Source: Selaginella moellendorffii (Eukaryota; Plantae; Lycopodiophyta). From it: a stretch of DNA of 64,000 bases. Location: the NCBI RefSeq assembly GCF_000143415.4, contig NW_003314279.1, positions 916,091 to 980,090 on the forward strand, in the 5' to 3' direction. The translations under genes and the position numbers were made by a program. The notes under the pieces were generated by a model that saw only the letters and a program-made list of their open reading frames with translations, was not told the DNA's origin and ran no database searches. Numbering within the stretch: position 1 is the first letter of the stretch; every line of letters starts with the position of its first letter. Of the stretch, positions 4,781 to 33,359 are shown piece after piece.

Positions 4781-5388
4781 GGAGGCTTGGGGTGAAAGCC
4801 CAAAGCGTGTGTTCCTCAAGGGGGGGGGGGCCTATGGGGGGTTCCAAATGTATAGTAGGGATAGTGGGTAGGTCGGGCATGGCCGACCAACCTGAGGCAT
4901 AGTCTAGCTCCCGCTTGCATGCCTGTCCTTGTTCTGCGTCCGGCTTGGGTCTAAGCCCAAGTTCCATTCCATGCTAACTGGTGGAGTACCCATGTCCTCA
5001 CGTTAGACCACCGGTATGCCGAAATAGCGCCAGACTCCGTTTGGCTCCGTTTTGTGTGCTGGTCCTGGCATTGGGATGCTGGTTGCTTCAGGACTGTTCC
5101 AAGTCGCTCCAGGCCCCTGTCCCTTCGCTCCTTGGGCTTTATGCTCGGGAGTTGCTCCGTGGTCCGGTTCCATCACTCCTTGGCTCCACGCTTGGGAGTT
5201 TGGCACCGTTCCTTCGTTCAGTGGCCCAAGGCCCTAAACCTCGGGTTCCTATGGACACGTGGCATGGACACGTGGCATGTGACACGTGGCATTTGTCACG
5301 TGGCACAAAGAGGGTTTAGATTCCGCTTCGTGGTGTTATCCTATGGTAAATCACCATAGGATAAAGGGTCAAAACCACGTGCGCTACA
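4779..5388. repeat. Putative LTR of the decayed retroelement
   Basis: GC-richer block next to the PBS-like motif, ending in ...GCTACA at 5388 before an abrupt switch to AT-rich DNA. Contains degenerate sub-repeats at 5110-5220 and a G-run at 4819-4830. Left boundary and orientation are ambiguous. Confidence 0.4.
5251..5306. repeat. Tandem GACACGTGGCAT-type array (4 G-box/ABRE cores)
   Basis: atggacacgtggcatggacacgtggcatgtgacacgtggcatttgtcacgtggcac seen directly. Confidence 0.85.
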
Positions 5389-6568
5389 TTTTTGACAAGA
5401 AATTAAAAATAGTAAAGTTATTAAATCTCTTGAAGCTGACAACAATTCAAGAGGCAACACACACACACACACACACAGATTGTAGCAACTAGATTGTAGC
5501 AAATTATGGCTTTGGGCTACATTAATACTCATCCCTACTTCCCTTTATATTTTCTTATTCCTCATACTAACTCATGGTTTTGATTTAAACACTAGGTGTC
5601 TTTGTAATTGCATTTTTTGATGGATTATAAATTTAGTGATAGCTTGCAAACAATCCCTCTCAATAGCTTTCTTAATAGAATTTTAGATATTAATATTAAA
5701 TGTTGTATAAACGAGTTTAAAGACAAAAGATCACAAGCATCGGATTAAAGAATATTTTAGAACATACTTGGATACTTCAGGTATATTCTTTATACTCTAC
5801 AAGTTTTCTAATAAACACTAATTTAGTTAACTCTAAATTTTTGGTTTGCTTAAGCAAACCTGTAGGTAATGGATGCTTGAATATTCAAGGATATTCTACC
5901 ATCGAACGCCTATTATTTATTTAGATTAATCCTGTATTTATAATCACTAGTTTATTTTACCATATTCAAAAAGATTATTCTTGTGTTTATAAATTATAAT
6001 TTTTTAAATAATTTTTGATATATTAGATTATTAAATAGAAATAACATTACCATTAAGTAAACTAAGTGTTGCTTCATAAAATTGTTTTTTATAACTTTTT
6101 TATAGTAAATATATATAAATGTCCACTTTTGGATTCTGGTGTAATGTGTTGATTACTATATCTGCACATTATCACATTTTTCGCACTTAATAAAATCTAA
6201 ATATATGTAAGAAGAAACAATTATATAACTTTTTGTACTGAAAGCACACTAATGGAGAAAATCACACTGATCTTCTTTTTGGAGAAACTCTTGCACTAAA
6301 GGGTATGAGCCAAGGTTATCATAAGCTGACATACATTTGAAATGCAATGAGTCAAGTTTTACAATCTAGTTTTGGCCGTGATCGCGCGAGCCCTATGCCT
6401 GTCCAACGCCGCGGATTGCCGCCGCCGGGGCTGCTGGTGTGGATTGACGCCCTGGCGATAGATTCTACACTGCTGCTGTTGCTGTTGGACGCGAGCTGAG
6501 ATCGCAATGCGGATGAATTGGTCACCAGCAGCCCTAGACGAAGAACCCTAAAAATGCAGTGGTGAGCC

Positions 6569-8326
6569 ATGGCGCTATCTGGATTGGCTTCGCCGCTGCC
6601 GAGATTCCACCGGAGCAGGAGCCCATACATCGAGGTACTCACTCCTCGCATTCTTCCTTGCGCGCGCATTCTTTTTGTTCGTTCTTCCACGCCTGTAGTT
6701 TGTTGCTTGTCCTCATTAGTTTAGCCTTTCTAGCTCCAGAGCTCTCGTCAGTTCTTCCATCACTTCCTGGACGTGAGGTCTACGAGGGCGAGACTTCCTC
6801 GATTGGGACACCAACAGCACAGGCTCCAGGTTCTCGGTATGCATGCCTTCTTCGTAGAAAACATTTCATTTGTGTATGAGTTTCTTACATTTTCGTCCCT
6901 GGCAGCTGCTGTGGATCCTGAGCTCCATACTGTTCTTGAGTTAGCTAGCGATGTGGAGCTTTCTGAGCTCTCGAGCATTCTCTATGGCAAGAGGTACGAA
7001 TCTAGAAACGCTCTTTTCGGAGGGAGCTGACTAGCTTGAAAAAAATCACAGCTTCTTTAGTCCTGTCTTTAAGTCCGTAGCACAGGGCGATGGCTCTAGT
7101 CCTCGGCATTCCGAGGACGGGGAAGAAAAACGAGATGATTTACTGGAACGGTTGGAATCGAGGCTTTTGTTTCTAGCCGCGGATGCCAAATCTACTGTGA
7201 CGTAAGTGCATTGCTTTGGAGCAAGTGTTTCTTTTTTAATTGTTGTACTACCGTTTAGTGGTCGGAGGCCCAGATACAGGGACGTTCTTTTACAAGTTCG
7301 ACAGAAACTCAAAATCCCGTGCTCCCTAAAACTTCCTACGGAGGACTTAGAAGCCGAGATATTTCTTTTCCTCCTCCAACAATCTTCAAGGCAAGCAATG
7401 ATGCTATTCTTGCCGCTCTTGACTTTTTTTTTCCAGTCCATCGGAGCCTCTGAGGATTGATGATGATCCGAGTGACGCTGAAACTTCCCAGTCTGGGTCA
7501 TGGCGCAAAAATCTCGCGGCAGCTCTCAAACTTGGGGGCCGTGAGCTCGTGTCCGCCGTGTTTAAAGTTTGTGTTTTTCCTTTCTTGGATTATCTGTCTA
7601 ACCTTACGCCAACGCGACAGGGTGGAAGCGCTCTCACAATGTCCACGCTCCAAAGATTGGTATGATCCTGTGATGTTTTCGGATATAAATTAGCCTGTCT
7701 TCAGGTGGCGAAGGAGCTTTCTGGAAAAATGCTGATGGAAGCTGCTCGTTACCAACTTGCTAGAGAGGCTCTAAAAAAGGTACTGTAATCGACCATGATT
7801 TCGTGGTAGTGTTCTTAAATAGTCGCAGCTCTTGTAGGGTGGTCAGCTGGTTGCTACAAAACTCGAGTCTCGCGTGACAATGCTTGCAGCAAGACAGGTA
7901 ACTCACCACAGCTTCTAACAAAGCTAGGAAGTGTTTACATTGTTTTGCAGTTACTTGCTGGGGCCGCTGCGAGATACATCACCATTCGGAGCACTATGAT
8001 GCTGCTTGGGCCCATGTAAGATGAGATGTTTAGCGCTTCCATTCTCATGTGAAATCTATGTTTTTGCAGTTTATGGGGAACGTTTATAGCTGATGTTGTA
8101 GTGACCGCTCTGGGACCGGATTACCTTCGTGTGGTCCGGGCAATCTATGCACTAGCGCAGGTAAATACGTTTCTTAACTTGATAGAGCTTGCTAAATGCA
8201 GATACACTGGAACTTAGATACGTCTGACGAGAACTTATGGATGGAAGCGAGGATCTCTTCTATGTCAAGGTACTCTAAAAGTTTTCTAAAAGTACTTAAG
8301 CTGCTATCGATTTCCCAGGTGATTAA
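6569..8326 (+). CDS. Multi-exon uncharacterised plastid-type protein of a conserved cyanobacterial/plant family (YaaW/UPF0174-like)
   Basis: ATG 6569 with a transit-peptide-like start. GT-AG exons encode ELHTVLELASDVELSELSSILYG, LESRLLFLAADAKST, YRDVLLQVRQKLKIPCSLKLPTEDLEAEIFL and AIYALAQIRLTRTYGW. Stop is 8289, or 8326 if the last intron is spliced. Confidence 0.7.
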
Positions 8327-8479
8327 AGATGGAGGAACCTCTCTGAGTTGCCGGTGTACAGAGATAGTTGGAAGCTTGTATAACTTGAATGCGTTTTTTT
8401 ATTCCTTGTTCTTGTTACTAAAGTAGAGACGTTGTGAAGTTCTCGTGGTGATTTTTTCTATATGGTACTCTTGGAGTGA

Positions 8480-9200
8480 GTCTAATAAGCTAAATTCTAT
8501 TAATGTATAGGAGTTTGCAATGGATCTGGGAGTGCCATGAGTCCTGTTTATTGAGGCCATATGTCACCAGCATTGCTTGGCAAGCATCAGGAATCCAGTA
8601 GATTACATTCTTGTGAATGTTTATGGAAGCTGTGAAGAAACGTTCTGGAGAGGTGTCCTCTGGTGCCCGGCTTATCATAACTGCGTCCTCCCCTCTTAGT
8701 CGAAGAGCTCAAACACGCCGGTGCTGCTCTGTCCAAGCAAGTACAGCTTGCCTTCCCAACCCATGAGCTTAAAGTTCCCTTAAAGTACTTCATTGACGTG
8801 GTGGAGTGAAAGGAACTCGCCATTGTCCGCGCGACCTCGCCTTTCTCTCCCATCCAAAGAATGGATGATGTTGTCACAAACCGGGGAAGAGGTTGTGACA
8901 AACTCCGCGAAATCCTCGTTGATATCCTCATGATGGTCGTGCTCTGTGACCAGCCACTCAGACTTCCATGAAACTACGCAACGGAAATACTACTCGATGA
9001 TCCGTAAATGGCAGCCTTAAGATGTGCCACTGCTTGACCTTTTCTCCACAGCGGGGCAAGAATTCTGGATGGTGGAAGTGGGTTTCCCACCCAAAAGGCT
9101 CTCTCCCGGAGCTTCAACTGGAATCACTTACCCAGACCCAAATGAGCAAAATATGTAACAAGGATAGCTTATTCCAAACATCGTTCCTCTCGACGGCATG
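8480..9200 (-). pseudogene. F-box gene pseudogene, inverted paralog of 10375-11379
   Basis: Minus strand reads LISRAPEDTS...QAMLVTYGLNKQDSW versus LISRAPKSIS...QAMLVTYNLSQQGSW in the intact gene. DNA match ttgggtctgggtaagtg at ~9125-9142. Frames are broken by stops and shifts. Confidence 0.75.
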
Positions 9201-10374
9201 GTTTGTTGTAGTGGCAGTTCTGCGTTCAGTGACCTCAGATTCGTGAGAGGAAGATTTATTTGAACTGGCGATTGGCTGATACTATGCTTGCTATATGTAT
9301 TTCTTTTTGTTAGTAAATTATATTCCAATCGGTCACATTCTTTTCATTTGTCCTGTTTGTTCTTAACACTTTGTTTTTGGATGTTACGTCCTGCATCCTG
9401 GATGACTTGGCTCCCTTGGCAATGAGTAGCAGGTGGGAGGCATCTGCAGTGAAAGAAAATAGAAGAAATTTTTTTAAAAAAAGAAAAAAAGAAAAAAAAG
9501 AAAGAAAAAAAAGAAAAGAGAATATTCTTTTTCTAATAGTAAATAGCTGGTCAATGTATCTATTTATCTATTTATATGCTATTTTAATAGTCTCATTTTG
9601 ATTAATGGATGCAAGAATGCAATTTGGATTATCTTTGCAATGGAGATTTTTGTCAGTCTTTAGCCTTCTTTAGTTACATTAGCTTTCTTTGGCCAAATTG
9701 ATTCCATTAAAGTCCTCCCCTTACTACATGCTCCTTCTCACTCACAATCTGATTTATTGTGGGAACAAGAATTTCTCAATCCAGACAGCTGTCCTATTTC
9801 ATAAATGAGGTCAAGCTTCTCACAGTTTGATAAACTTTTGTTTTTCTATTCCCCAAGGATAATAAAAAATACCCCTCACCTCTATCAATATGAGTGTATG
9901 AAATATAGAAATAAAATGTAGAAATGTGTAACTTTAATTAGCCCTAAAACCATAAGTTATATACAAGAGTGAGTGGTTTGGATTGAAACCAATATAATAA
10001 CTACCAAAATTCCATTATACTAATACTAATATATAACATCATAATTATACATTTAGACCTCATATTGGTATAACCCTCTAAAATACTATTGTGGTTTATA
10101 ACTACCACATCATAACTTTATACATGGCATTCCAAGATGTAAGGGGATGGATGGTTATCCTTTGCAGGATCTCTTTTGCTGGTCTCTTGGGCTCAAAGCG
10201 CAGGCAAGAAAACCTCCTTACCCAGGCCCATTACAGAGATGCAGATTGGAAAGTGGAAAAAACTATTAAACAATTTAAACACTTTAAAGGTAAAATGAAT
10301 GTGATGTAGTAATAACTATCTAAAAGGTAACAAAATAAAGTCACAAATTACATTTCCTCTGGTTAGGGCTGGTG

Positions 10375-15732: not shown

Positions 15733-16307
15733 ATGGCGGCGTGCATCCAAGCGTTGGCAATTAGAGCAACGCTTCCATCTACGTTTCTGGGTACGTCGCA
15801 GGTGTCATGGAGGCGGCAACAGCGCCTGGTTCTCGCCAATCCATCCAGCTCCCGGGTCTCGGCGTGGTTTAAATTCGGGAACCGGGGATTGGATTCGCAA
15901 GGAGCTGGAATCTATGGCAGCCAGAAGAGGGACGATTTCAACAAGGACGACGTCGAACAGGTCAGAGATTTTCCTGGAATGTTTGTTCTCATGGTTCTTT
16001 CTCTCTCTCTCTTTTTTTTCTTGGTTTTGATCCTCTCTTTGAGCAGTACTTCAACTACATGGGAATGCTGGCGACCGAGGGATCCTACGATAAGATGGAC
16101 GCGCTGCTCAACGAGGGTCTCCATCCGGTGGACATTCTATTGCTCATGGCTTCTTCCGAGGGAGATAAGCCCAAAATCGAGGAGCTTCTTCGCGCTGGAG
16201 CTAGCTACACGGTGAAAGACGGCGAGGGAAGAACAGCATTGGACAGGGCTAAAGACGACGAGATCAGAGATCTCATCCAGAACTTCCAGACCGTCCCTTC
16301 CCCGTGA
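15733..16307 (+). CDS. LTD: LHCP TRANSLOCATION DEFECT / GDC1 chloroplast ankyrin protein (exons 15733-15960, 16047-16307)
   Basis: WFKFGNRGLDSQGAGIYGSQKRDDFNKDDVEQ|YFNYMGMLATEGSYDKM...HPVDILLLMASSEGDKPKIEELLRAGA, with one GT-AG intron. Confidence 0.93.
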
Positions 16308-16360
16308 AAATCTGTCCATCGTATAGGATCAATCCAAGTTTCCCTCCAAGGTTTTGTTGG

Positions 16361-17851
16361 ATGCGATGGGTCACACAATGGCGATCTTCTTCGTCGTCGA
16401 GTTATGGGCGACGCTCGATCCATTCCTCCTCGCTGCTTGGTGGGCGGTTTTCTTTCCCTCTGGGCAGCGATCAGCAGCGCCTCCAGGCCCAATTCGCCTC
16501 ACAGCTCCAGGCATGCCGAGATCTGGCCACCGCGCGGCGGCTCCACGCCCGGATCCTCGCCACCGCTCTTCGATCCGACACCTTCACCGCGAATCTCCTC
16601 GTCCAGATGTACGGACGATGTGGCTGCCCGGAGACCGCACGCCAGACGTTCGATGGCATTCTCGCAAGGAACTCCTTCTCCTGGAACATACTCATGGCGG
16701 CAAATGCCCACAATGGGCATCTTGAGAACGCGAAGAGCGTCTTTGACAAGATGCCGGAGCGCGACGTGGTGACATGGACGGCTATGATGGCGTCATTTGC
16801 CGAGAGGGAAGATCTCTTTCGTCCAAAACAGTTGTTTGATTCCATGCCGGAAAGGAATGTGGTGTCCTGGAACGTCCTCGTTGGAGCATATGCGCAGCAA
16901 GAACAACTTGAGTCTAGCAAAGGAGCTTTCTTTCGAATGCCCTGCCACAGCATCGTTTCCTGGAACTCTAAGCTTACAGCTTACGCGCAAGGGCAGCAAA
17001 TCGATCGCGCAAGCGAGTTCTTTGAATCGATGCCACAGCGCGACGCGATTTCCTGGAACATCGCAATCTCAACACTTTCCCAAACAGGAGATTTGGTAAA
17101 AGCAAAGAAGCTGCTTGATTTGATGCCGGCGGTGGGGATCGTGTGCTGGACGGCAATGGTGGTGGCAAACGGGCAGCTCTGTCAACTAGAAGAAGCGAAG
17201 AAAATCTTTGATTCTATGCCGGATCGTGATGATCTTGCTGGGACGGCTATGGTGACCGCATTTGCGCAGAATGGAGAAGTGGACTCTGCCAAGGCTGTGT
17301 TTGATGCGATGCCAGAGCACAGCGTCTACGCCTGGAATGCTCTCCTCGCGGCCTACGCTCTAAATTCCCGCCCGGGTCGCGCTATGGAGATCTTCGCAAC
17401 CATGCCCGAGAAGGACGTGGTCTCTTGGAACGTCGTCCTCGCCATGCTCTCCCAGCGCGATCAAGACGGGCGCGGCAGCGCGATCCAGCTCTTTCAATCG
17501 ATGTTGCTCGAGGGATTCCTCCCAAACGACGTCTCGCATCTCTGCGTGCTCATCGCTTGCAGCCGGGTTGGATCAATCCACGCCGGGCGCGACTGCTTCG
17601 CGGCGATGAGCTCGGATCACGGATCCACGCCTGAGCGCGTCCACTACTCGTGCATGGTCGATCTCCTGGCCCGCACGGGACAGGTCCTCCTCGCCCAAGA
17701 TCTCATCGAGACGATGCCTTTCTTTCCCGACGACGTGGAGTGGCTGACGCTCACGGTGAGCGGAGCTCCCGCTGGACCGAGGCTCATGGATCTCCGGCCT
17801 GGCCGATCCGGTCCCTACGTAGTGCTCTCGAATTCCATGCTAGCGCCGTAA
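16361..17851 (+). CDS. PLS-class pentatricopeptide repeat protein (S-motif run, shortened E domain, no DYW)
   Basis: Eight tandem ~31-aa MPERDVVSW-type motifs, then HYSCMVDLLAR and PYVVLSN. First ATG is 16361 (the ORF track starts at a GTG). Confidence 0.9.
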   Translation: MRWVTQWRSSSSSSYGRRSIHSSSLLGGRFSFPLGSDQQRLQAQFASQLQACRDLATARRLHARILATALRSDTFTANLLVQMYGRCGCPETARQTFDGILARNSFSWNILMAANAHNGHLENAKSVFDKMPERDVVTWTAMMASFAEREDLFRPKQLFDSMPERNVVSWNVLVGAYAQQEQLESSKGAFFRMPCHSIVSWNSKLTAYAQGQQIDRASEFFESMPQRDAISWNIAISTLSQTGDLVKAKKLLDLMPAVGIVCWTAMVVANGQLCQLEEAKKIFDSMPDRDDLAGTAMVTAFAQNGEVDSAKAVFDAMPEHSVYAWNALLAAYALNSRPGRAMEIFATMPEKDVVSWNVVLAMLSQRDQDGRGSAIQLFQSMLLEGFLPNDVSHLCVLIACSRVGSIHAGRDCFAAMSSDHGSTPERVHYSCMVDLLARTGQVLLAQDLIETMPFFPDDVEWLTLTVSGAPAGPRLMDLRPGRSGPYVVLSNSMLAP

Positions 17852-23120: not shown

Positions 23121-23646
23121 GAAAGAGAGAGAGAGAGAGAGAGAGGACATTAGTTGGAAAAACTTTTGTGTCGCTATGTGCCAGACTTATTTACCCAGGT
23201 CGGTTGACCCACAAACTCGGTGGCTTTTCGATCTGTCGTGATGCTGTTGCTAGCACCTGCCGCCTCCAGAAGATTCCTTGTAATAGGGAAACAGATGACG
23301 ATTTTGGGCCGGGAAATAATGATGGCGATTCGCTCGATTAGTTTGTATCTAGCAGCATCGCGGGGAACCAAATACAGACAAGAGCATCAAGAGCCGCGGC
23401 TGCGTAGCACGGGGTCGGGAGATGCATCGTGCGGCCTCCAAGACATCGCCAGCGCTCTCGTGGCCATGTACGCGAAACTGCAACCAATTTCCGCTTCGGT
23501 CCTTACGAGGAATTGACGCACGACACGAGCACGACGATGCCGGTTGCAAGGGAAGAGCTGCTCTACAAGCTCTTTGGCCAAATGATTCAAAGGAAGAGGT
23601 GAAACGAGATGTCGAATTATAAAGAATAGATGTACAGGAAACAAAA

Positions 23647-24722
23647 CTAGCACGAGGCTCGAATTTCACCATGTCCTCCCGTGAGAGGCGAGAGCCTACC
23701 CATTTTGATCATGCCATTGGCGAAGGCAGTGAAAAATGCCTTCTGATTGTCCGCAAACTCCCTGACAAAGCCCGCCAGATCACTCTGCAACAGCTGCTGG
23801 TCTGAGAAGAGGAGCGACTGATTCGCTTGGACAGCTCGAAAGTACAAGTTGTCGAACGTGGTGGGGGAGGGATCCAAATTGTTCAATCTGTTTAGGGCTG
23901 TTGGAGGGCAAGTCTTCTCGAGTCGGGACTTGAGGGCCGGATCGATGCTATCCCCTGCGGTTCCGTTGAAGAGGCGGGCGCTGAATGTGGAGCACTGGGC
24001 CTGGCCGATGGAATGGCCTCCTGAGAGCGCTACGAGATCACGCTTGGAAAGGCCCCGCTTTTGGAAGCTCTCAATCAGCTGCGTTGCGGTGAGATTTGGG
24101 CTGGGAATGGCGTCCACCGCGGCAGCGACGCTCGCGGAGCTGGGATTGTCCCGTCGGCCAAACTCTACTGTCCATGACGGGCCACCAAGCTGCAAATTTC
24201 GAAAGAGAAGAAAGCATTTGTAACTCAAATCAATGGAGACCTCACTTACGGCTATGACGGATTCCCGGGCGCTCAGAGCAAGAATGTCCGCGCATGATAC
24301 AGTTTCCGGGCATGAAGTCTCCACGGCGCGTTTGATATTGTTGATGATTTTGAGTCCCTTGGTGGAGCGTCCGTCTCCTCGCTCCTTCCCGACCTGGGGG
24401 AGCAGCGATCCGTCACAGCCCTGAGCGACAGCCAAATAAATGACAAACGAGGACTTATTATTAGAGTACTTACTTGAGCAAAGCAATCGCGGAAGTGGAG
24501 CTTGAGGATGGATGCAGAGGATCGGCTGTCATTGGCAACTTCAAAGCGAATCACGCTTCTAGCGATCTGGGGGAAGTCGGGGCAAGTATTAGCGTAGAAA
24601 GAAGTGGAGAGCTCCGAGGGCGTTGTTGGTGATTCCTGGTGAATTGCATAGCGCCGCAGCAGCGTTAACGCGAGGAGTAATGCTGCTGAGGTGAGTGGAG
24701 CTAGATATTTAAATTGCTGCAT
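23647..24722 (-). CDS. Class III peroxidase-like protein copy 1 (3 exons; distal motif KLHFRDC)
   Basis: Signal/anchor peptide, LSTSFYANTCP, GCDGSLL, VSCADILAL, GRRD, LSGGHSIG, FDNLYF, GEIRASC; two GT-AG introns. Confidence 0.9.
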
Positions 24723-25004
24723 TGTGATCTTTCTTTCACGAGGGAGTGAAGGTGTGAAGAGAAGCTTGGCCTCTTGGCCCAGAACAAGAACAAGCTTCTC
24801 TGGATGGCTTTCAAGAAACAGCAAGAAAACTAGAACCCTAAACTAGACATTGGATTGTCGGGATTTAAGGATTCTCCAACGCGTTCAAATCTCCTTCGTC
24901 GAAGATATGCGAAAGGCCACGATCGATTGGCGTGACGCGAAAAACCGGGGTGTGCGGTTTTTCGCGGAGAATTTTCGCGTTATTTTGGGACCCTTTTTAC
25001 TATG

Positions 25005-25050
25005 CGCCACGTGTTTCCAACAATTGGAAACACGTGGCGAAACACGTGTT
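25005..25050. promoter_or_regulatory. 16-bp perfect palindromic stem carrying G-boxes, plus a third G-box
   Basis: cgccacgtgtttccaa-caa-ttggaaacacgtggcg followed by aacacgtgtt. Confidence 0.6.
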
Positions 25051-25399
25051 CTCTTCCGCATATCAAAAAAGCTAGCGGTCAAACCGACCCGTTTTCATTC
25101 ATGGACTCATGCGCTCACAGCCACAAAGCCTCAAAGAAAAAACACACCTTTCTAGTCGTAGCGTCTGCCTAACACCCCGCGCGCTCAGTCTCTGCTCCAC
25201 GCCTCCGAGGAATCAATCTCGCTCCGCCCCCAACCTCGCAAGAACCCTCTCCCAAGATGTCCCGCCACGTCAGCCTGTTCGCCACGTAAGCTGTTCGCCA
25301 AGAAGCGCCGCCCGTTATGTGATAGAACCAAAAAATAGAAAAAGTTAGGGTTAGGGTTCGACAGAGGATTCAGTTAGGGCTTCGCTAACTGGTCATTGA

Positions 25400-25812
25400 T
25401 TCAAACGGGACACCTTAGCCCGCTACGGTGTAGCGGTCACTCCCCCGTTTTCATTGCTAGTGCCAGCACCGAGCTCCAATCCGCCGCGACCCAGAATGGC
25501 AGCCTCGTCGATGACCTTGCTGCCGTGCCGAGCTGCCCCACTCCCGATTTCTCCCGGGGTGTGGGAACTCACGTCACTTTGCTCAACCCGCTAAAGGTGC
25601 TGGTGCCACCCAGCGCTCGCGTTCCACACAGAAGATCTCTCCTCGTTTACGTTCCAGGAATGGATTGCACGGGCCAGGGGATTCGACCGCAGTTGCCATC
25701 TCTCGTCGCTGCCGGGTACGTGTAGCCTTTGTGTTTAGAATCACGACTAGACTAAAGTTTCGCCATTGCAGCCACGACATAAGATGTGTATACATCCCGA
25801 GCAGCAACAGAG
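25400..25812 (+). pseudogene. Esterase/lipase/thioesterase (PES/ELT acyltransferase-like) 5' fragment
   Basis: LLVYVPGMDCTGQGIRPQLPSLVAAG|HDIRCVYIPSSNR resembles the ELT-family LLYLPGIDGTG...FDIWCLHIP block; truncated at the peroxidase repeat arm. Confidence 0.6.
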
Positions 25813-25999
25813 TTTGAGGGAAGTGTGAAGAGAAGCTTACTCTAAAGAAAGAGAACACGGGAACACGGGAACTCTACTACATATGTGTTCTATTTTCTTG
25901 CTGTTTCTTGAAAGCCATCCAGAGAAGCTTGTTCTTGTTCTGGGCCAAGAGGCCAAGCTTCTCTTCACACCTTCACTCCCTCGTGAAAGAAAGATCACA

Positions 26000-27075
26000 A
26001 TGCAGCAATTTAAATATCTAGCTCCACTCACCTCAGCAGCATTACTCCTCGCGTTAACGCTGCTGCGGCGCTATGCAATTCACCAGGAATCACCAACAAC
26101 GCCCTCGGAGCTCTCCACTTCTTTCTACGCTAATACTTGTCCCAACTTCCCCCAGATCGCTAGAAGCGTGATTCGCTTTGAAGTTGCCAATGACAGCCGA
26201 TCCTCTGCATCCATCCTCAAGCTCCACTTCCGCGATTGCTTTGCTCAAGTAAGTACTCTAATAATAAGTCCTCGTTTGTCATTTATTTGGCTGTCGCTCA
26301 GGGCTGTGACGGATCGCTGCTCCCCCAGGTCGGGAAGGAGCGAGGAGACGGACGCTCCACCAAGGGACTCAAAATCATCAACAATATCAAACGCGCCGTG
26401 GAGACCTCATGCCCGGAAACTGTATCATGCGCGGACATTCTTGCTCTGAGCGCCCGGGAATCCGTCATAGCCGTAAGTGAGGTCTCCATTGATTTGAGTT
26501 ACAAATGCTTTCTTCTCTTTCGAAATTTGCAGCTTGGTGGCCCGTCATGGACAGTAGAGTTTGGCCGACGGGACAATCCCAGCTCCGCGAGCGTCGCTGC
26601 CGCGGTGGACGCCATTCCCAGCCCAAATCTCACCGCAACGCAGCTGATTGAGAGCTTCCAAAAGCGGGGCCTTTCCAAGCGTGATCTCGTAGCGCTCTCA
26701 GGAGGCCATTCCATCGGCCAGGCCCAGTGCTCCACATTTAGCGCCCGCCTCTTCAACGGAACCGCAGGGGATAGCATCGATCCGGCCCTCAAGTCCCGAC
26801 TCGAGAAGACTTGCCCTCCAACAGCCCTAAACAGATTGAACAATTTGGATCCCTCCCCCACCACGTTCGACAACTTATACTTTCGAGCCGTCCAAGCGAA
26901 TCAGTCACTCCTCTTCTCAGACCAGCAGCTCTTGCAGAGTGATCTGGCGGGCTTTGTCAAGGAGTTTGCGAACAACCAGAAGGCATTTTTTACCGCCTTC
27001 GCCAATGCCATGATCAAAATTGGTAAGCTCTCGCCTCTCACGGGAGGACATGGTGAAATTCGAGCGTCGTGCTAG
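26000..27075 (+). CDS. Class III peroxidase-like protein copy 2 (exons 26000-26248, 26302-26472, 26533-27075)
   Basis: Mirror image of 23647-24722 (coordinates sum to 50722 at start and stop); same motifs. Confidence 0.9.
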
Positions 27076-27478
27076 TTCCTATACGTCTATCCTTTTTCAC
27101 TATACTCCATTACAACAAAGAAAAAGAAACTTCACCTCAGTTCCATCCGCAATCTATGCTTCAAAACAGTGTGTCCTAGAAGATCTCCTGTAACAAACAC
27201 ACAAAACGAATCACAAAAAGAAAAAACATCCTAAGAGCTTTGAGTACTGACCTGTGTTCCGAGCAAAATGGCTCCTCGATCACAACTTTACTGCCCTTCA
27301 TGGCAAAATCCAGAGAGTAATCCGCATCAACGTTCTCGGGATCCACTGCCTTCCACTGCACCCCCGGATATCCTTTTGCAAGAAAGCGGTGGACTTGCGA
27401 GAGCTTCTCTCCTTTTCCCAGGCACCCGCAGCCCGCTTCAAGCTCCAAATCCTTCCCTTCCCTCTTCAAGGCCAGCAC

Positions 27479-27566
27479 TGAGACAAATCGGGATCAAAGC
27501 GCACCGCACTAGCGGACAGAACAGGAAAACCCTAATGGACGCGTGGCGAGGGTGTGTCGTGTAACA
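27479..27566 (-). repeat. Copia 3' LTR (88 bp)
   Basis: 86/88 identical to 31700-31787. Confidence 0.97.
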
Positions 27567-30500
27567 CTCCCCCCCAAACCGAAGCCACTCACCAAACCAA
27601 ATCTGTCACGTAGGAGCTGAAACTGGTGTGGCCCCAACGGCTTAGTGAGAAGATCAGCTGGCATATCCTGTGTCCCGAGATGTTGGACGGCGAGGGTGCC
27701 ACTGTCAACCAACTCACGTATGTAGTGAAATTGGACTTCAATGTGCTTCGAGCGGGCATGGTGGACGGGGTTCTTGGACATGGCAATGCTGCTTCGGTTG
27801 TCACACCAAGAAGTAGTGGGGCCAGCTTGTACGCATCCCAGCTCAGCAAGTAACCCTCGAGCCCAAACCACGTCCCTACTACCAGTAGTGAGTGCGATGT
27901 ACTCTGCTTCTGCACTAGAAAGGGCCACCACAGATTGTCGCTTGGAGGCCCACGTGATGGCACCTCCTGAGAAGGAAAGGCAAATGCCAGAAGTCGAGCG
28001 ATGACCTTTGTTGTTGGCAAAACTAGCATCCGTGTAGCATGCTAATGATGCATGACCCCCTGAATAAGCAATGCCATAGTCCATAGTGCCCCGGAGGTAT
28101 CTCACGATATGCTTGGCGGCTTGCCAATGTATGGTGGTTGGTGATGTGTTGTACTGACTCAAGGCAATAGTCGCATATGTGATGTCAGGGCGAGTCATCA
28201 GGGCCAAATATGTGAGGCAACCAATGAGATGCCGATAGGGAGTCCCAGTGGGTAGAGGCTCACCAGACTGCTCAAGTGTGAGGTCGATAGCACCAACGAC
28301 CATCGGGGTCTTGACAGGGTGGCAATCACGCATACCAAACCGATCCAGCAAGACTTCGACTTTACGTCGTTGGCTAAGCATGTAGCCACCAGAATCAGGA
28401 TCACGTGCGACTTCAAAGCCAAGAAAGTAGGAGACTTGGCCAAGGTCCTTCATCTGGAATTGCTGGCTGAGAGCATCTTTCAGAGCATCAATGGCATCGT
28501 TGTCATCACCCATGATGAGCAAATCATCAACGTAGAGGGCCACAATAACCATGCACTCAGCATGACCATTGACATACACATTGTGATCAGCATGACAGCG
28601 ACGAAAGCCTTGAGCACGTAGGGTGGCATCAAATTTTTGATACCAAATACGGGAGCTCTGTTTTAAGCCATACAAAGCTTTTCACAATTGCCATATAGGG
28701 CCACCAGGGGTAACATCATCCTCAAAACCAGGAGGTATATGCATATAGATGTCCTCTTGCAAATCCCCATTCAGAAATGCAGTTTTGACGTCCATATGGT
28801 GGACTTGCCATTTGCGAGCAGCCGCAAGGGCAAAAAGAGTACGGAGGCTGGCCATTTTTACAACCGGTGAGAATGTTTCATCGTAGTCAAGGCCATGGAC
28901 TTGGCGAAAACTGCGAACAACCAACCGTGCCTTATAACGTACAACCTGGCCATCTTTCCCATACTTTTTGGAAAAAATCCATTTTGGATCCAAAACACGT
29001 CGTCCCGGTGGCGCTGAATCAACTGGAACATAAGTTCCGTTAACCCGAATGGAAGAAACTTCTTCCGCAATAGCTTCCATCCAAGATGAAGCCTCAGGTC
29101 CTGAGATGGCCTCATCATAAGTCATGGGAATGCCGACGTCAACAAGGCCACAAAAGTCATCAAGCTCTGCAGCATCTGCTTCAGCATTTTCCCGGACTTT
29201 TAACGAGGGCCGACGTTCCCGGGGGTGATCAAGAACTGGCATCGGATCAGGCATGCCACGACGTCGACAAGGTGGTGGAGGTGTCGGAGGCCTGTCCTCG
29301 ACTGGAGGAGCATCAGCTGGTTCAAGCATGTCCAGAAGTGGAGGATTCCCCAATGGAATCTCTGGTGGCAACTCATGAATAGGATCTTGAGGTGGAGGCA
29401 AGGGTGGACCATCTCCCATAAGTGGGATCAAAGGAACAAGTCGAGTCTCAGCAATAAAGGAAGGATCTTGAAGAGCCTCTGTAGGCATGGGAAAGTCATC
29501 TTCATTGAACATGACATCAGTGCTTACAATAGCCTTATGAAATGCAAGATCCCACAACTTGTAAGCTTTCCTCCCGATAGTGTCGTCCTGTGCATATCCC
29601 ACGAAGATGAATTTTTTACTCTTGGGATCTAGCTTTTTCCGAAGTTGATCAGGGGTATGTGCGTATGCTGCACAACCGAAGACCCGAAAGTGGGACACAT
29701 CAGGAGTAGAACCTGTCCAAAATGCCTCAGGGGTTTTTCCATCCAAAGCAGCCGTGGCAAGGCGATTTTGTACATGCATTGCTATGGCTATGGCCTCTTG
29801 CCAAAACATCTTGTTAAGATGTGCATCAGCTAACAAAGCACGAGTAGCATTGACAAGAGCACGATTCTTCCTTTCTGCAACACCATTTTGCTGGGGGGTG
29901 TAGCGGGCTGTAGCTTGCAAGCGTATGCCTACATCACGACAAATGCCCCGAAGCTCATTGTTGAGGTATTCACCACCACCATCAACTCAAAGAGCTTTTA
30001 TCTTTCGACCAAGGAGGTTTTCAACGTACGCCTTGTACGTTTGAAAGGCAGCAACTGCATCACTCTTACGCATCAAGAAGTGGATGCATGTTCGACGGCT
30101 ATAGTCATCAATGAATGTGATGAAATATCTTGCGCCATCGTGACTTGGCACGTCCATAGGGCCGCAAAGATCAGAATGGACTAAGTCCAGAAGTCCAAGT
30201 GCTCGATGCTTACTTGGTGAGAAATTCCGGCGGTGATGCTTGCCTAAAACACAAGCTTCACAGAATGTAGATGGGATACGTCGGAAATCCAAGCCAGTAA
30301 CAATATCTTGGGACTTCATCCGTTGAAGAGATTGATAATGAACATGACCGAGTCTTTTATGCCAAAGCTCCGCACGAGAATCTGCCTCCACAGTCTGAAA
30401 GGCCTGAACTGGGTCGACAGCAGTAATCTCATACAAGTCCCCAATGCGTGACCCACGAAGCAACTGTGTACCAAGCATATGAAAGTCACTAGAGTCAACT

Positions 30501-31675
30501 AAAGAGACTCCCTTTGCATCAAAGACTACCACCGCATTTTGATCACATATCTTGGCGACGGATATTAAGTTTCGTCGCAAGGTGGAAACATGCATGGCAC
30601 CATCAAAGGCCATGGTCCTTCCATGATCGAGTGAGAGCCGGAATTGCCCAATGCCGTCCACAGGGATGGTGGTATTGTCACCTAAATGAACACCACGTTT
30701 TCCAATGCTCGGCTGATAACACTCAAAAAGACTCTGCTTATGACTCATAAGATTAGTACAACCAGAGTCTAAGAGCCACCGGCTTGGTGCGGCAAGTGCC
30801 TCTGCGTTGTAGAGCTCCCCAACAGCCTCATTTGCAGTAGCAATTCCATCACGCTCAAGCAAATTGGCTTTCGCCAACGTAGCTAGTCGCTTGACAGGCT
30901 TGGGAGCAAGGCAATCTCGAGCCCAGTGGCCCATCTCCAAGCAGCGAGCACACTGATTCTTCGCAAGTCTAGGCTTGGCACGCCCAGATGCCACGGAATT
31001 TTGCCCTTTCTGGGCATTTGCAGCTGCATGCGGTTTTGCCACCTGGGCATCACCAGAAGCCTGCGAAGCATACATAGCCTGTGGCATTTCAGCTCTCTCA
31101 CTTCGCATGGCCTCAATGTTGCGAAGACTCCTCACGGCATCTGCCCAAGTCATCCCTGGTTGGAGAAGCAGGCTCTCAACTGCATTCTTCCAGCTCGCTG
31201 GCAAGGACCTGTAGAGCCGCAGCCTCTACTGCTCATCCGTGAGACAGTGCTTCGCCCCAACAGCCGCAAGTTGTGTGAAGAAGCCCTGGAGCTTGGCAGT
31301 GTGAGGCTGGATACTGCCATTTTCCTCTAGCCTCAAGGAATCCATTTGTGAATGGATGTTGAAGACATCCATTTCACTCTTGGTGCCATAAGTGTCACTC
31401 AGCCACTTCCAAAGCTCTGCCGTAGTGGACTTTGGAATCGATGGGGCAGCAAAGAGGACATTTGAAGACAAGCACATCACAATACTCCCTCTAGCCTTGG
31501 AATCCCGAAGGTTCCAATCACGCACCTCAGCAGCGCTAGAGCCTGGAGCCGGCGATGACTCTGTCCCATCTACAATCCCCAACAAACCATGAAACAAGAG
31601 ATAGGATTCAAGATGGATCTTGAATCCCTCAAACCCTTCTCCATCAAACTCGCGGATGGATGGCTTTCCTTCCAT
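27509..31675 (-). pseudogene. Copia gag-pol polyprotein, single frame with three premature stops
   Basis: Zn knuckle CARCLEMGHWARDC, protease WLLDSG, integrase LWHKRLGH...TPQQNGVAER, RT HMDVKTAFLNG and YVDDLL, RNase H TDAS...SSAEAEY. Stops at 31226, 29987 and 28682, all in the same frame. Confidence 0.95.
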
Positions 31676-31699
31676 AGCGCTATCCCAGCTCCGATACCA

Positions 31700-31787
31700 T
31701 GAGACAAATCGGGATCAAAGCGCACCGCGCTAGCGGACAGAACAGGAAAACCCTAATGGACGCGTGGAGAGGGTGTGTCGTGTAACA
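31700..31787 (-). repeat. Copia 5' LTR (88 bp)
   Basis: Directly abuts the PBS; 86/88 identical to 27479-27566. Confidence 0.97.
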
Positions 31788-33359
31788 AGCACAACCTGGT
31801 ATAGCATGCTTGTGCTATGTCAAACGCGTGTACCTCCTTGCAAACGAATGGACGCTGGAGTTGGCCGAGAATAGCATAAGACCACGCGATGCTCGAGAGC
31901 TGCTCGATCGATTCTTGGAACTGTTCTTCACCGAGCTCTGGAGAACCTTGTTTTGCTGAAGAGCCGCGTCCAATGACTCCAGGAAAGAATCCAGAGGTTG
32001 AGCCATGCCTAAAGAAGCTGGGCCAGTGCCTGTGCTTGAAACTCCTCTACTCGCAGCGTCCAAGAGCTTCTCAAAGAGTGCGGGCGAGCTATGCTGCATG
32101 GAAGCAAAAGTTCCGGCTACGTTGGCAATGTTCTGGGGATTGAACTCGTCAACCTTCGCCACTGCTGCTCGAGCGATTATCTCCATCTCTCCGTGGTAAA
32201 GAAGGTGGCCTCCAATCTTGGAGATGGCCCAGGCAATGTTGGAGACGCCCTGTGCGTTGCATTCCGGAAGAAGCTCCATAGCCGAAGCAACGAGCTCGGC
32301 GACGTCACACTGCATGGCGTACTTGAGCCTTCTCGCCTCGGACATGGACAGCGTCACGATCTTGTGAAGAGCAGTGGCGACGTTGATGGAGCTCAATCGA
32401 AACCTTCCTTTCACTCTCTCGATCGTCTCCAAAACTCCTTCCACGTCCCTCGAGTCGACCAAGTCCTGGTTGAGACGAATTTCCAGCAGCCTTGGATCTT
32501 TCAAGGCCGCTCGCCATCATCTGACTCTTCACCACCTCCTTCCTCTCGACGCTCCCCATAAACCACTGTCAACTCGGTCGTGAGCTCATCTTCGCCCTCG
32601 TCACCTTCGCTGCTCGCATCATCGTCCTTGTCTTTCTTCTTTTTGGTCTTAATCGCGCTGCGCGATTCCTCCACCTGCAATGCAGCCTCGGCACCTTCCT
32701 GCTTGGCCCTGGTCTTCTTCTTCTTCTTGGCCTTCTTGGAGATTCGCAAATGCGGGGGCAGTAGGGCCTGGAAATCCTCGTCGGTGAAGTTCCGGAAGCT
32801 CATATCCTGAATCGCAAGCTCCCGAGCTCTAGTCGCCCAATCCAGCTCGCCCGCCTTGCGCCGCTGCCTCTGATCTTCCTCCTCCTCCTCCTCCGAATCA
32901 TCGTCGTCAAAGAAATCCGGCTTCACTGGCGCCGGACGCGATGGCGCCGCGGCATTCGCACCCAACCAGGGAAATCGCCTCACCTGCGATCGCTGCCCCT
33001 GCCGCCAGTGCAGCGAAGAAAGCGCGCTACGTACAGCGCCGAGGAATGTAGGAGCTCCATGGCGAGCACTTAGGGCTGGGTAACACACGAAAAGATTTTC
33101 TCGCTAATCAATCAGAAAGAATGGGCGATTTTTTAGTTGAGCGCTACATCACCGCGATCATTCGATGATCTTTTCCATCTTTTCTTGGTTTTTTTTGTTG
33201 TTCATCACCTTTTCGTGAGTCGTCCTAGAATAAAGAATAGGATCTCATCCGCCATACTTTCACGTACCTCGGACTTGATCTTTTCGTTTCAAGCACTCGT
33301 TTCATTAAAGTGCCACTTTATAATTCTTCCGAGCAGCGCGGCTTCGAAAACTCCAGCTA

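What the first reader, a model, noticed from the sequence alone, without database searches (positions are those of the whole stretch)
23647..27075. Class III peroxidases with both distal catalytic residues replaced (KLHFRDC instead of RLHFHDC)
Both copies keep the signal peptide, disulfide cysteines, proximal His (GGHSIG), RRD and splice sites, with open frames. However, HRP-equivalent Arg38 is Lys and the acid-base His42 is Arg, and the Asn70 region reads GDGRSTKG. Arg38 and His42 are established as needed for efficient compound I formation. Matching changes in an otherwise intact scaffold suggest a heme-binding pseudo-enzyme or different chemistry rather than decay (inference).
Basis: partly seen in the sequence, partly recalled or inferred. 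Interest (0 to 1): 0.75.

Follow-up and report, generated by a model that had tools for sequence, protein, structure and literature searches.

The report
Spikemoss peroxidases missing both catalytic residues
Two head-to-head genes in the spikemoss Selaginella moellendorffii encode secreted peroxidase-type heme proteins in which the two residues that normally activate hydrogen peroxide are replaced; the gene clade carrying this change has been kept by purifying selection, so these look like working proteins with altered chemistry, not dead genes.

Summary
The window is Selaginella moellendorffii. It holds two intact, 3-exon, 320-aa class III peroxidase genes in a 1185-nt inverted repeat (A, minus strand, 23647-24722; B, plus strand, 26000-27075). 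Both read KLHFRDC where 109/109 close homologues and 134/140 diverse representatives read R..FHDC. The Pro-Asn (Asn70) loop is deleted or remodelled.

The scaffold is otherwise intact: signal peptide, eight Cys, both Ca sites, proximal GGHSIG, and Asp247.

The pair is not isolated. It belongs to a monophyletic, species-restricted clade of about 10 loci at two genomic sites. The clade sits on the longest branch of the family tree, sister to a canonical Selaginella peroxidase.

After the substitutions, the clade evolved under purifying selection (between-locus dS ~0.35, dN ~0.09, omega ~0.25). Arg42 is encoded by CGC, CGT and CGA in different copies. A few sister copies are decaying (frameshifts, Cys11Tyr, Arg42Gln).

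Best reading: a selected, secreted, heme- and Ca-binding peroxidase derivative whose classical H2O2/Compound I chemistry is crippled and whose all-cationic distal pocket serves different chemistry or a binding role.

Biochemistry is untested. The genes are already annotated as "peroxidase P7", but I found no paper describing the substitution.

The parts
23647..24722 (-). Copy A gene (= NCBI XP_002972085.2, P0003): exons 24474-24722, 24250-24420, 23647-24189 (stop included); 320 aa
   Evidence: GT..AG introns, open frame, translation identical to P0003
26000..27075 (+). Copy B gene (= XP_002971880.2 isoform X2, P0125): exons 26000-26248, 26302-26472, 26533-27075; 320 aa. Intron 2 (26473-26532, 60 nt) is in frame; NCBI isoform X1 (P0001, 340 aa) retains it
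26219..26239 (+). Copy B distal motif KLHFRDC (Lys at HRP Arg38 = 26219-26221 AAG; Arg at HRP His42 = 26231-26233 CGC)
24483..24503 (-). Copy A distal motif KLHFRDC
26323..26367 (+). Copy B remodelled and shortened loop PQVGKERGDGRSTKG replacing the canonical ..SEK.A.PN.NS.RG block (Asn70 lost; Glu64 equivalent kept)
   Evidence: AF2 pLDDT is low here
24355..24399 (-). Copy A remodelled loop, same sequence
26701..26718 (+). Copy B proximal-histidine motif GGHSIG (His170 equivalent, residue 199)
24004..24021 (-). Copy A proximal-histidine motif GGHSIG
23645..24829 (.). Left arm of the inverted repeat (gene A plus 107 nt upstream of its ATG)
25893..27077 (.). Right arm of the inverted repeat (gene B plus 107 nt upstream of its ATG)
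24830..25892 (.). 1063-nt unique spacer between the divergently oriented genes (shared upstream region). The counterpart region L003 has a ~5.4-kb gap between the two genes (4600-10001).

Best explanation
What they are (shown): the two genes are functional members of a young, Selaginella moellendorffii-restricted clade derived from an ordinary class III (secretory plant) peroxidase.

How the clade arose (shown): on its stem, the distal 'push-pull' machinery was replaced as a set. Arg38 became Lys, His42 became Arg, the Asn70 loop was deleted or remodelled, and Val46, Leu55, Asp56 and Arg75 also changed. Everything needed to fold, be secreted, bind two Ca2+ and ligate heme through the proximal His-Asp pair was kept. 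After that burst, the proteins evolved under purifying selection.

Consequence for chemistry (inferred): the product is a secreted, glycosylated, heme-containing wall/apoplast protein. Without a distal base, its H2O2-driven Compound I formation should be slower by orders of magnitude.

Likely role (inferred): the permanently cationic Lys/Arg distal pocket suits it either to oxidants or ligands that arrive already deprotonated or anionic, or to O2/superoxide-type oxidase cycles. Alternatively it may have a non-catalytic heme/ligand- or wall-binding role. Classical guaiacol-type peroxidase turnover is unlikely.

History of the pair (shown): the head-to-head pair is an old inverted duplication, and its 5' 800 nt were recently homogenised by gene conversion.
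For: Family and fold. Pfam PF00141 E 2e-54; full-length E 4e-75 to switchgrass Pvi9 and 5e-63 to HRP-C. AF2 mean pLDDT 83; Foldseek top hits are all class III peroxidases, TM 0.81-0.89.

Substitutions. Of 120 columns that are >=90% conserved in 63 canonical relatives, 88 are kept in all six clade proteins. The losses are concentrated in the distal segment: 12/28 there versus 10/91 elsewhere, Fisher p 4e-4.

Clade. Monophyletic (support 1.0), sister to the canonical S. moellendorffii P0006, on the longest branch of the tree (0.68 versus a median of 0.066). Tajima relative-rate tests show about twice as many unique changes as in canonical paralogues, p 7e-6 to 0.05.

Selection after the change.
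- Between the two loci: dS 0.34-0.38, dN 0.08-0.10, omega 0.21-0.27.
- Fisher test on 64/236 synonymous versus 58/706 nonsynonymous changes: p 3e-12.
- Codon ML omega 0.34, lnL -2276.0, versus -2318.5 with omega = 1 (kappa was also fixed in that run).
- By segment: mature part 0.20, distal segment 0.28, proximal part 0.20.
- Copy A versus copy B: 11 synonymous and 6 conservative changes, omega 0.18.
- Arg42 is encoded by CGC, CGT and CGA in different copies.

The duplication is real and old. The counterpart region L003 carries the same pair. In the 3' 283 nt, A is closest to L003-minus (98.2%) and B to L003-plus (96.1%), while A-B identity is 93.3%. In the 5' 813 nt, A-B identity is 99.5%.

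Established enzymology. HRP H42A and H42V form Compound I 1e5-1e6 times more slowly (PMC8157560). Arg38 and His42 drive heterolysis (PMC7374321). Distal-mutant HRP and APX have been crystallised (entry titles: 1kzm, 4atj, 2y6b, 2vcs); that their heme is bound is my own knowledge, not shown by the titles. In DyP the Asp, not the Arg, deprotonates H2O2 (PMC6153280). Chlorite dismutase has a catalytically active distal Arg and reacts with the anionic oxidants chlorite and hypochlorite (PMC9910045).
Against: - No expression evidence could be obtained (look-up of sequencing runs closed). No transcript-derived copies appear in the protein clusters.
- No orthologue exists outside S. moellendorffii, so the time under selection is limited (dS ~0.35).
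- Several clade members are degenerating: L001a has a 3' frameshift and Gln42; L003-minus has a 24-nt deletion plus a 1-nt deletion that destroys the signal peptide; L002b has Cys11Tyr. Within the recent tandem array, omega rises to 0.3-0.7.
- Heme binding and any activity are inferred only.
- The AF2 loop that replaces the Asn70 region has low confidence.
- omega < 1 averages over lineages and cannot prove that both window copies are individually needed.
Confidence: 0.6

Rival explanations
1. Decay: the clade consists of young, redundant duplicates that lost the catalytic residues and are on their way to becoming pseudogenes. Intact frames only reflect youth and gene conversion.
For: Some members are visibly broken or damaged (L001a frameshift, L003-minus signal-peptide deletion and frameshift, L002b Cys11Tyr, Arg42Gln in two array copies). 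The five-copy array is haplotype-specific, with omega 0.3-0.7. There is no orthologue in other species and no expression data. Other class III genes with replaced distal residues turn up only as singleton or two-member 90% clusters in angiosperm genomes (Kalanchoe, Aristida, Craigia).
Against: Between-locus omega is ~0.25 at dS ~0.35, p 3e-12. The remodelled distal segment is itself constrained, omega 0.28. Arg42 is kept through three synonymous codons. 88/120 family-invariant columns are kept, including all heme-proximal, Ca and disulfide residues. Both window copies are intact, with only conservative replacements.
Confidence: 0.17
2. Still an ordinary peroxidase: Lys38 and Arg42, perhaps with the loop Asp/Glu, compensate well enough that the proteins perform normal H2O2-dependent phenol oxidation.
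For: The scaffold is fully conserved, including Phe41, Pro139-x-Pro, the proximal His-Asp pair and the Ca sites. Purifying selection is similar in size to what I expect for ordinary enzymes (own knowledge, not tested here). The loop keeps acidic residues (Glu96, Asp99 in copy A/B numbering) that might approach the pocket.
Against: His42 replacement in HRP lowers Compound I formation 1e5-1e6-fold (PMC8157560). Arg (pKa ~12.5, own knowledge) cannot act as a base at apoplastic pH. In DyP the base is Asp, not Arg (PMC6153280). R38/H42 are invariant in 134/140 diverse representatives, which argues that no easy compensation exists. The array copies delete the Glu64-equivalent residues altogether.
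Confidence: 0.1
3. Non-catalytic pseudo-enzyme: the fold is used as a wall-binding, Ca/pectate-binding, heme-sequestering or decoy protein, and the heme iron does no chemistry.
For: Both catalytic residues are lost together with the Asn70 network. There is precedent in the same superfamily: APX-L/TL29 lacks the residues essential for peroxidase activity yet is conserved (PMC8069737). Selection acts on the whole mature protein.
Against: Unlike APX-L, the proximal His, Asp247 and heme-lining residues are all retained and constrained (omega 0.20 in the proximal part). That would be unnecessary if heme were irrelevant. Arg42 itself is maintained rather than drifting.
Confidence: 0.13

Closest known systems
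Canonical class III plant peroxidases (HRP-C 1ATJ, Arabidopsis A2 1PA2, switchgrass Pvi9 5TWT; nearest paralogue S. moellendorffii 'peroxidase P7' P0006)
   Same: Same Pfam family, fold (TM 0.81-0.89), signal peptide, 4 disulfides, 2 Ca sites, proximal His170-Asp247, Phe41, and phase-0 introns 1 and 2 at the family positions.
   Different: Arg38->Lys, His42->Arg and Asn70 lost; the loop is 7 residues shorter (11 in the second locus); Val46, Leu55, Asp56 and Arg75 are changed; intron 3 is absent; identity to any canonical member is 53% or less.
Engineered distal-pocket mutants of HRP-C and APX (H42A/V/E, R38S/H42E, APX R38K, H42A)
   Same: The same positions are altered in the same fold. Several of these mutants have been crystallised (PDB titles).
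   Different: Those are laboratory single or double mutants with 1e5-1e6-fold slower Compound I formation (PMC8157560). Here the changes are natural, combined (K38 + R42 + loop), and maintained by selection. I found no H42R/R38K double mutant.
APX-L / TL29 (class I pseudo-peroxidase of the thylakoid lumen)
   Same: A member of the same peroxidase-catalase superfamily that lost the catalytic residues yet is conserved (PMC8069737).
   Different: [quoted passage not shown] It is class I, plastidial, and ancient. The Selaginella clade keeps the proximal His and heme pocket, is class III, secreted, and species-restricted.
DyP-type peroxidases and chlorite dismutases (distal Arg heme enzymes)
   Same: A distal arginine above a His-ligated heme b; the analogy is with a cationic pocket handling anionic oxidants (PMC6153280, PMC9910045).
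   Different: Unrelated alpha+beta barrel fold. DyPs also have a distal Asp as base. This is a resemblance of pocket chemistry only, not homology.
Sporadic non-canonical class III sequences in angiosperm genomes (Kalanchoe E38/Q42 P0169; Aristida K38/Y42 P0246; Craigia R38/R42 P0247)
   Same: Class III fold with replaced distal residues. Craigia also has Arg at position 42.
   Different: Their 90%-identity clusters hold only one or two sequences, and no selection analysis was done on them. They are independent events, not related to the Selaginella clade (<=41% identity).

Membership tests
Class III plant peroxidase (criteria as listed in bioRxiv 10.1101/2024.01.25.577222, after Passardi 2004) | Distal signature RLxFHDCxxxGCDxS with distal Arg and His | tested here: not met
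   The sequence reads KLHFRDCFAQGCDGS. The Cys, Gly, Asp and Ser positions are kept, but Arg->Lys and His->Arg.
Class III plant peroxidase | Proximal signature LxGxHxxGxxxC with proximal His | tested here: met
   LSGGHSIGQAQC in both copies.
Class III plant peroxidase | Eight conserved Cys (four disulfides) | tested here: met
   C47, C80, C85, C120, C126, C206, C234 and C320 are invariant columns in alignment A1.
Class III plant peroxidase | Distal and proximal Ca-binding residues | tested here: met
   Asp43, Gly48, Asp50 and Ser52 equivalents (D79, G84, D86, S88) and Ser171, Asp222, Thr225 and Asp230 equivalents are present. Val46->Ala is a backbone ligand. The Glu64 equivalent is kept in the window copies and deleted in the second locus.
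Class III plant peroxidase | Conserved intron positions and phases ('001') | tested here: inconclusive
   Intron 1 lies between Cys44 and Cys49 in phase 0, and intron 2 is in phase 0, both as in the family. Intron 3 is absent; intron loss is common in the family according to the same preprint.
Class III plant peroxidase | N-terminal signal peptide | tested here: inconclusive
   A hydrophobic N-terminal stretch (residues ~8-22) precedes the mature start aligned to HRP residue 1 at residue 37. No signal-peptide predictor was available.
Class III plant peroxidase | Pfam PF00141 above gathering score and class III fold | tested here: met
   185 bits versus a cut-off of 27. The top 24 Foldseek hits are all class III.
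Class III plant peroxidase | H2O2-dependent peroxidase activity (EC 1.11.1.7) | not testable with these tools
   Needs recombinant protein.
APX-L / TL29-type pseudo-peroxidase | All catalytic positions (Arg38, Trp/Phe41, His42, proximal His) replaced (PMC8069737) | tested here: not met
   Phe41 and the proximal His are retained. The proteins are class III, not class I.
DyP / chlorite dismutase | Dimeric alpha+beta ferredoxin-like barrel fold | tested here: not met
   The model is an all-alpha peroxidase-catalase fold; no DyP or Cld appears among the top 50 Foldseek hits listed.

The most novel reading that the evidence does not exclude
A plant has naturally converted the class III peroxidase scaffold into a heme enzyme with a base-free, all-cationic (Lys38/Arg42, possibly Arg42-Asp salt-bridged) distal pocket. 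It would work like chlorite dismutase or peroxynitrite-type catalysts on anionic or pre-deprotonated oxidants (peroxynitrite, nitrite, hypohalite, organic peracids), or as an O2-dependent oxidase in the apoplast. That would be a new catalytic class within the peroxidase-catalase superfamily.
Probability: 0.15. Interest if true: 0.8.

Novelty: new variant of a known kind. Interest (0 to 1): 0.55.

Why it matters
Arg38 and His42 are textbook invariants of the peroxidase-catalase superfamily. They were invariant in every close homologue and in 96% of diverse representatives checked here.

A natural, multi-copy clade that replaced both residues, plus the Asn70 network, has remained under purifying selection while keeping the heme-proximal side. 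It is a ready-made experiment on what a class III scaffold can do without acid-base catalysis.

Either outcome would be new. It could show new heme chemistry in the plant apoplast. Or it could be the first class III counterpart of the APX-L/TL29 pseudo-peroxidase. It also warns that family-based annotation ("peroxidase P7") and gene counts of class III peroxidases include members that probably do not perform the namesake reaction.

The significance is limited because the clade is confined to one species, some copies are decaying, and expression is unverified.

Tried and rejected

2. Word search restricted to the distal region of P0003 (residues 62-102). It returned only the window's own proteins, so it was uninformative about other H42R proteins. 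The exhaustive representative search was used instead.

3. Literature. No paper holds any of six SELMODRAFT gene ids of clade members that I searched. No paper describes class III peroxidases lacking the distal His. The SmPrx search gave only family surveys.

4. Outgroup codon analysis of the stem branch. The DNA of the sister gene P0006 is not on record, so positive selection versus relaxation on the stem could not be separated. Only protein relative-rate tests were possible.

5. Assembly artefact or collapsed haplotypes as the source of the inverted repeat. Rejected, because the counterpart region L003 has the same pair, with position-specific orthology in the 3' ends.

6. Hairpin-RNA locus. 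Considered and set aside: the genes are divergently oriented, so no single gene transcript spans both arms (sequence).

7. Spliced model. The joined model was never typed or sent to a search tool. Exons were searched by reference. Full-length steps used the database proteins P0003 and P0125, which are identical to the models. Exons were joined only inside local scripts, for translation and codon counts.

8. Side-chain geometry of Lys38/Arg42. Model coordinates are not returned, so this could not be measured.
Full report
WHAT IS THERE

The window is from Selaginella moellendorffii. Translations of the region are 100% identical to NCBI proteins annotated "peroxidase P7".

Two genes lie head to head inside a 1185-nt inverted repeat (arms 23645-24829 and 25893-27077, 1063-nt spacer).
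- Copy B (+) has exons 26000-26248, 26302-26472 and 26533-27075.
- Copy A (-) is the mirror image: 24474-24722, 24250-24420 and 23647-24189.
- All four introns are GT..AG (53 and 60 nt), and both frames are open for 320 aa.
- Intron 2 is in frame. NCBI's isoform X1 (P0001, 340 aa) is the intron-retained form.

How the spliced model was handled. Once the word search returned P0003 (= copy A) and P0125 (= copy B), I used these stored proteins for full-length steps. I never typed the joined sequence or sent it to a search tool. Exons were joined only inside local scripts, for translation and codon counting.

Pfam PF00141 matches at E 2e-54. Full-length HMMER E-values against solved class III peroxidases run from 4e-75 (Pvi9) to 5e-63 (HRP-C).

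The alignments place Lys at HRP Arg38 and Arg at HRP His42: KLHFRDCF against RLHFHDCF.

The next conserved block (..SEK.A.PN.NS.RGF) is replaced by PQVGKERGDGRSTKGL. HMMER deletes Pro69-Asn70-Val71, while MAFFT pairs Asn70 with an Asp. Either way there is no Asn.

The following are all present:
- the eight Cys;
- Asp43, Gly48, Asp50 and Ser52, and Ser171, Asp222, Thr225 and Asp230 (the Ca sites);
- Phe41, GRRD, GGHSIG (proximal His) and the Asp247 equivalent.

This is not a chance variation of a loose motif. All 109 motif-bearing homologues outside the clade have R...H. In the exhaustive search of 1.84 billion representatives, 134 of the 140 best hits that cover the region have R38/H42.

IT IS A CLADE, NOT A PAIR

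Cluster look-ups and locus retrieval show the same KLHFRDC state at several places.
- A counterpart region, GL377584.1 (L003), is ~93% identical and colinear with the window. It carries the same head-to-head pair.
- A second locus on GL377615.1 holds five tandem copies interleaved with VPS13 N-terminal fragments. Its sister haplotype, GL377574.1, holds a single copy before a full-length VPS13.

In a protein tree the clade is monophyletic (support 1.0) and sister to a canonical S. moellendorffii peroxidase (P0006, RLHFHDC). It sits on the longest branch of the tree, 0.68 against a median of 0.066. Tajima relative-rate tests give about twice as many lineage-specific changes as in canonical paralogues.

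Nothing outside this species is closer than about 53% identity.

WHAT CHANGED AND WHAT DID NOT

Of 120 columns that are >=90% conserved in 63 canonical relatives, 88 are unchanged in all six clade proteins examined. The losses are concentrated in the distal helix and loop (12 of 28 columns, against 10 of 91 elsewhere; p 4e-4).

The changed positions are Arg38Lys, His42Arg, Val46Ala/Ser, Leu55, Asp56, the Glu64-Asn70 loop and Arg75Lys. In other words, the acid-base and charge-relay apparatus was replaced as a set, while the proximal side, Ca sites and disulfides were not.

The AF2 model (mean pLDDT 83, pTM 0.82) is confident everywhere except the signal peptide and the remodelled loop. It superposes on class III structures at TM 0.81-0.89.

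SELECTION

Between the window-type locus and the second locus, both already K38/R42:
- dS is 0.34-0.38, dN is 0.08-0.10 and omega is 0.21-0.27;
- the excess of synonymous change is highly significant, p 3e-12;
- a codon model gives omega 0.34, lnL -2276.0, against -2318.5 with omega fixed at 1 (kappa was also fixed in that run, so the test is somewhat confounded);
- by segment, omega is 0.20 for the mature protein, 0.28 for the remodelled distal segment, 0.20 for the proximal part and 0.51 for the signal peptide.

Arg42 is encoded by CGC (window), CGT (L003) and CGA (second locus), so it has been kept through synonymous change.

Copies A and B differ at 17 sites, all within the CDS: 11 synonymous and 6 conservative replacements.

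Thirteen of those 17 sites fall in the last 200 nt.
- In the 3' 283 nt, A is closest to L003-minus (98.2%) and B to L003-plus (96.1%), while A-B identity is 93.3%.
- In the 5' 813 nt, A-B identity is 99.5%.

The inverted duplication therefore predates the split of the two regions, and the 5' part of the window pair was homogenised later by gene conversion.

SIGNS OF DECAY IN SOME RELATIVES

- L001a (P0004) has a 1-nt insertion that truncates the C-terminus.
- L001a and its neighbour L005 carry Arg42Gln (CGA->CAA).
- L002b has Cys11Tyr.
- L003-minus has a 24-nt deletion plus a 1-nt deletion that destroys the signal-peptide frame.
- Within the recent, haplotype-specific array, omega is 0.3-0.7.

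This fits redundancy after recent amplification. It does not erase the between-locus signal. Both window copies are intact.

MECHANISM

Established knowledge:
- Arg38 and His42 drive heterolytic O-O cleavage (PMC7374321).
- HRP H42A and H42V form Compound I 1e5-1e6 times more slowly (PMC8157560).
- Distal-pocket mutants of HRP and APX have been crystallised (entry titles 1kzm, 4atj, 2y6b, 2vcs); that their heme is bound is my own knowledge.

Inference: the Selaginella proteins still bind heme and Ca2+, but they cannot deprotonate H2O2 efficiently, because Arg and Lys are not bases at apoplastic pH.

In heme enzymes that carry a distal Arg, either a separate Asp is the base (DyP; PMC6153280) or the oxidant arrives as an anion (chlorite dismutase; PMC9910045).

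I therefore favour a selected heme protein with crippled classical peroxidase turnover and a cationic pocket. That pocket would suit anionic or pre-deprotonated oxidants or ligands, or oxidase-type cycles. A purely non-catalytic role is the main alternative.

None of this could be tested here. That NCBI lists both a spliced and an intron-retaining isoform hints at transcript support, but this is only my inference about how such models are built.

COMPARISON AND NOVELTY

By fold, Pfam family, disulfides, Ca sites, proximal signature and intron positions, these are class III peroxidases. They fail the family's distal signature, as listed in bioRxiv 10.1101/2024.01.25.577222.

The nearest conceptual precedent is APX-L/TL29 in class I, which lacks every residue essential for peroxidase activity (PMC8069737). 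The present clade differs in keeping the heme-ligating side.

A few unrelated angiosperm class III sequences also have replaced distal residues: Kalanchoe E/Q, Aristida K/Y and Craigia R/R. So loss of the distal His is rare but recurrent.

The genes are already in the databases under routine names. I found no paper describing the substitution or any class III member lacking the distal His.

Verdict: a new variant of a known kind, of moderate-to-good interest. The decisive tests are expression and recombinant biochemistry.

Noticed in passing
window 23645-24829 vs 25893-27077: Concerted evolution inside the inverted repeat. The 5' ~813 nt of the two genes (including the 5' flank and both introns) are 99.5% identical, while the 3' ~283 nt are only 93.3% identical and instead match their positional counterparts in L003 (98.2% and 96.1%). 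This points to a gene-conversion tract ending ~200 nt before the stop codons.
   Followed up: yes
L002 17155-25557, L005 9902-10945, L001 10001-18456 (GL377615.1) vs L004 9902-10945 (GL377574.1): The second K38/R42 locus is a five-copy tandem array of ~7.4-kb units (peroxidase plus a VPS13 N-terminal fragment) on one haplotype. The sister haplotype has a single peroxidase followed by a full-length VPS13 gene. This is a recent haplotype-specific amplification that also duplicated the 5' end of VPS13.
   Followed up: partly
window 26473-26532 (and 24190-24249 on the minus strand): Intron 2 is 60 nt, in frame and free of stops. Retention would insert 20 residues between helix D and the GGPSW motif. 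NCBI lists this as isoform X1 (P0001, 340 aa).
   Followed up: no
window 25005-25039: A perfect 15-nt inverted repeat with a 5-nt loop lies in the spacer between the divergent genes. Each arm contains a CACGTG (G-box-like) hexamer. It occurs once in the window and is not found in the fetched counterpart loci.
   Followed up: partly
window 27509-32504 (minus strand): A Ty1/copia-type retroelement sits directly downstream of copy B, split into several ORFs (RVT_2, SH3_retrovirus, Pol_BBD, gag_pre-integrase, zf-CCHC). The counterpart region L003 resumes colinearity only after it, so it appears to be an insertion specific to this haplotype.
   Followed up: partly
L003 3584-4660 (minus strand): The counterpart of copy A has a 24-nt deletion plus a 1-nt deletion in the signal-peptide exon and a 12-nt deletion in the loop exon. 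The JGI model (P0122) starts at a downstream Met and lacks a signal peptide, so this is either a pseudogene or a non-secreted variant.
   Followed up: partly
proteins P0169, P0246, P0247: Unrelated angiosperm class III peroxidases with replaced distal residues: Kalanchoe fedtschenkoi ELQFQDC, Aristida adscensionis KLFFYDC, and Craigia yunnanensis RLQFRDC (two members). Loss of the distal His recurs sporadically in the family.
   Followed up: no
window 16304-17848 (+): A PPR-repeat protein ORF (Pfam PPR E 8e-52) lies upstream of the peroxidase pair.
   Followed up: no
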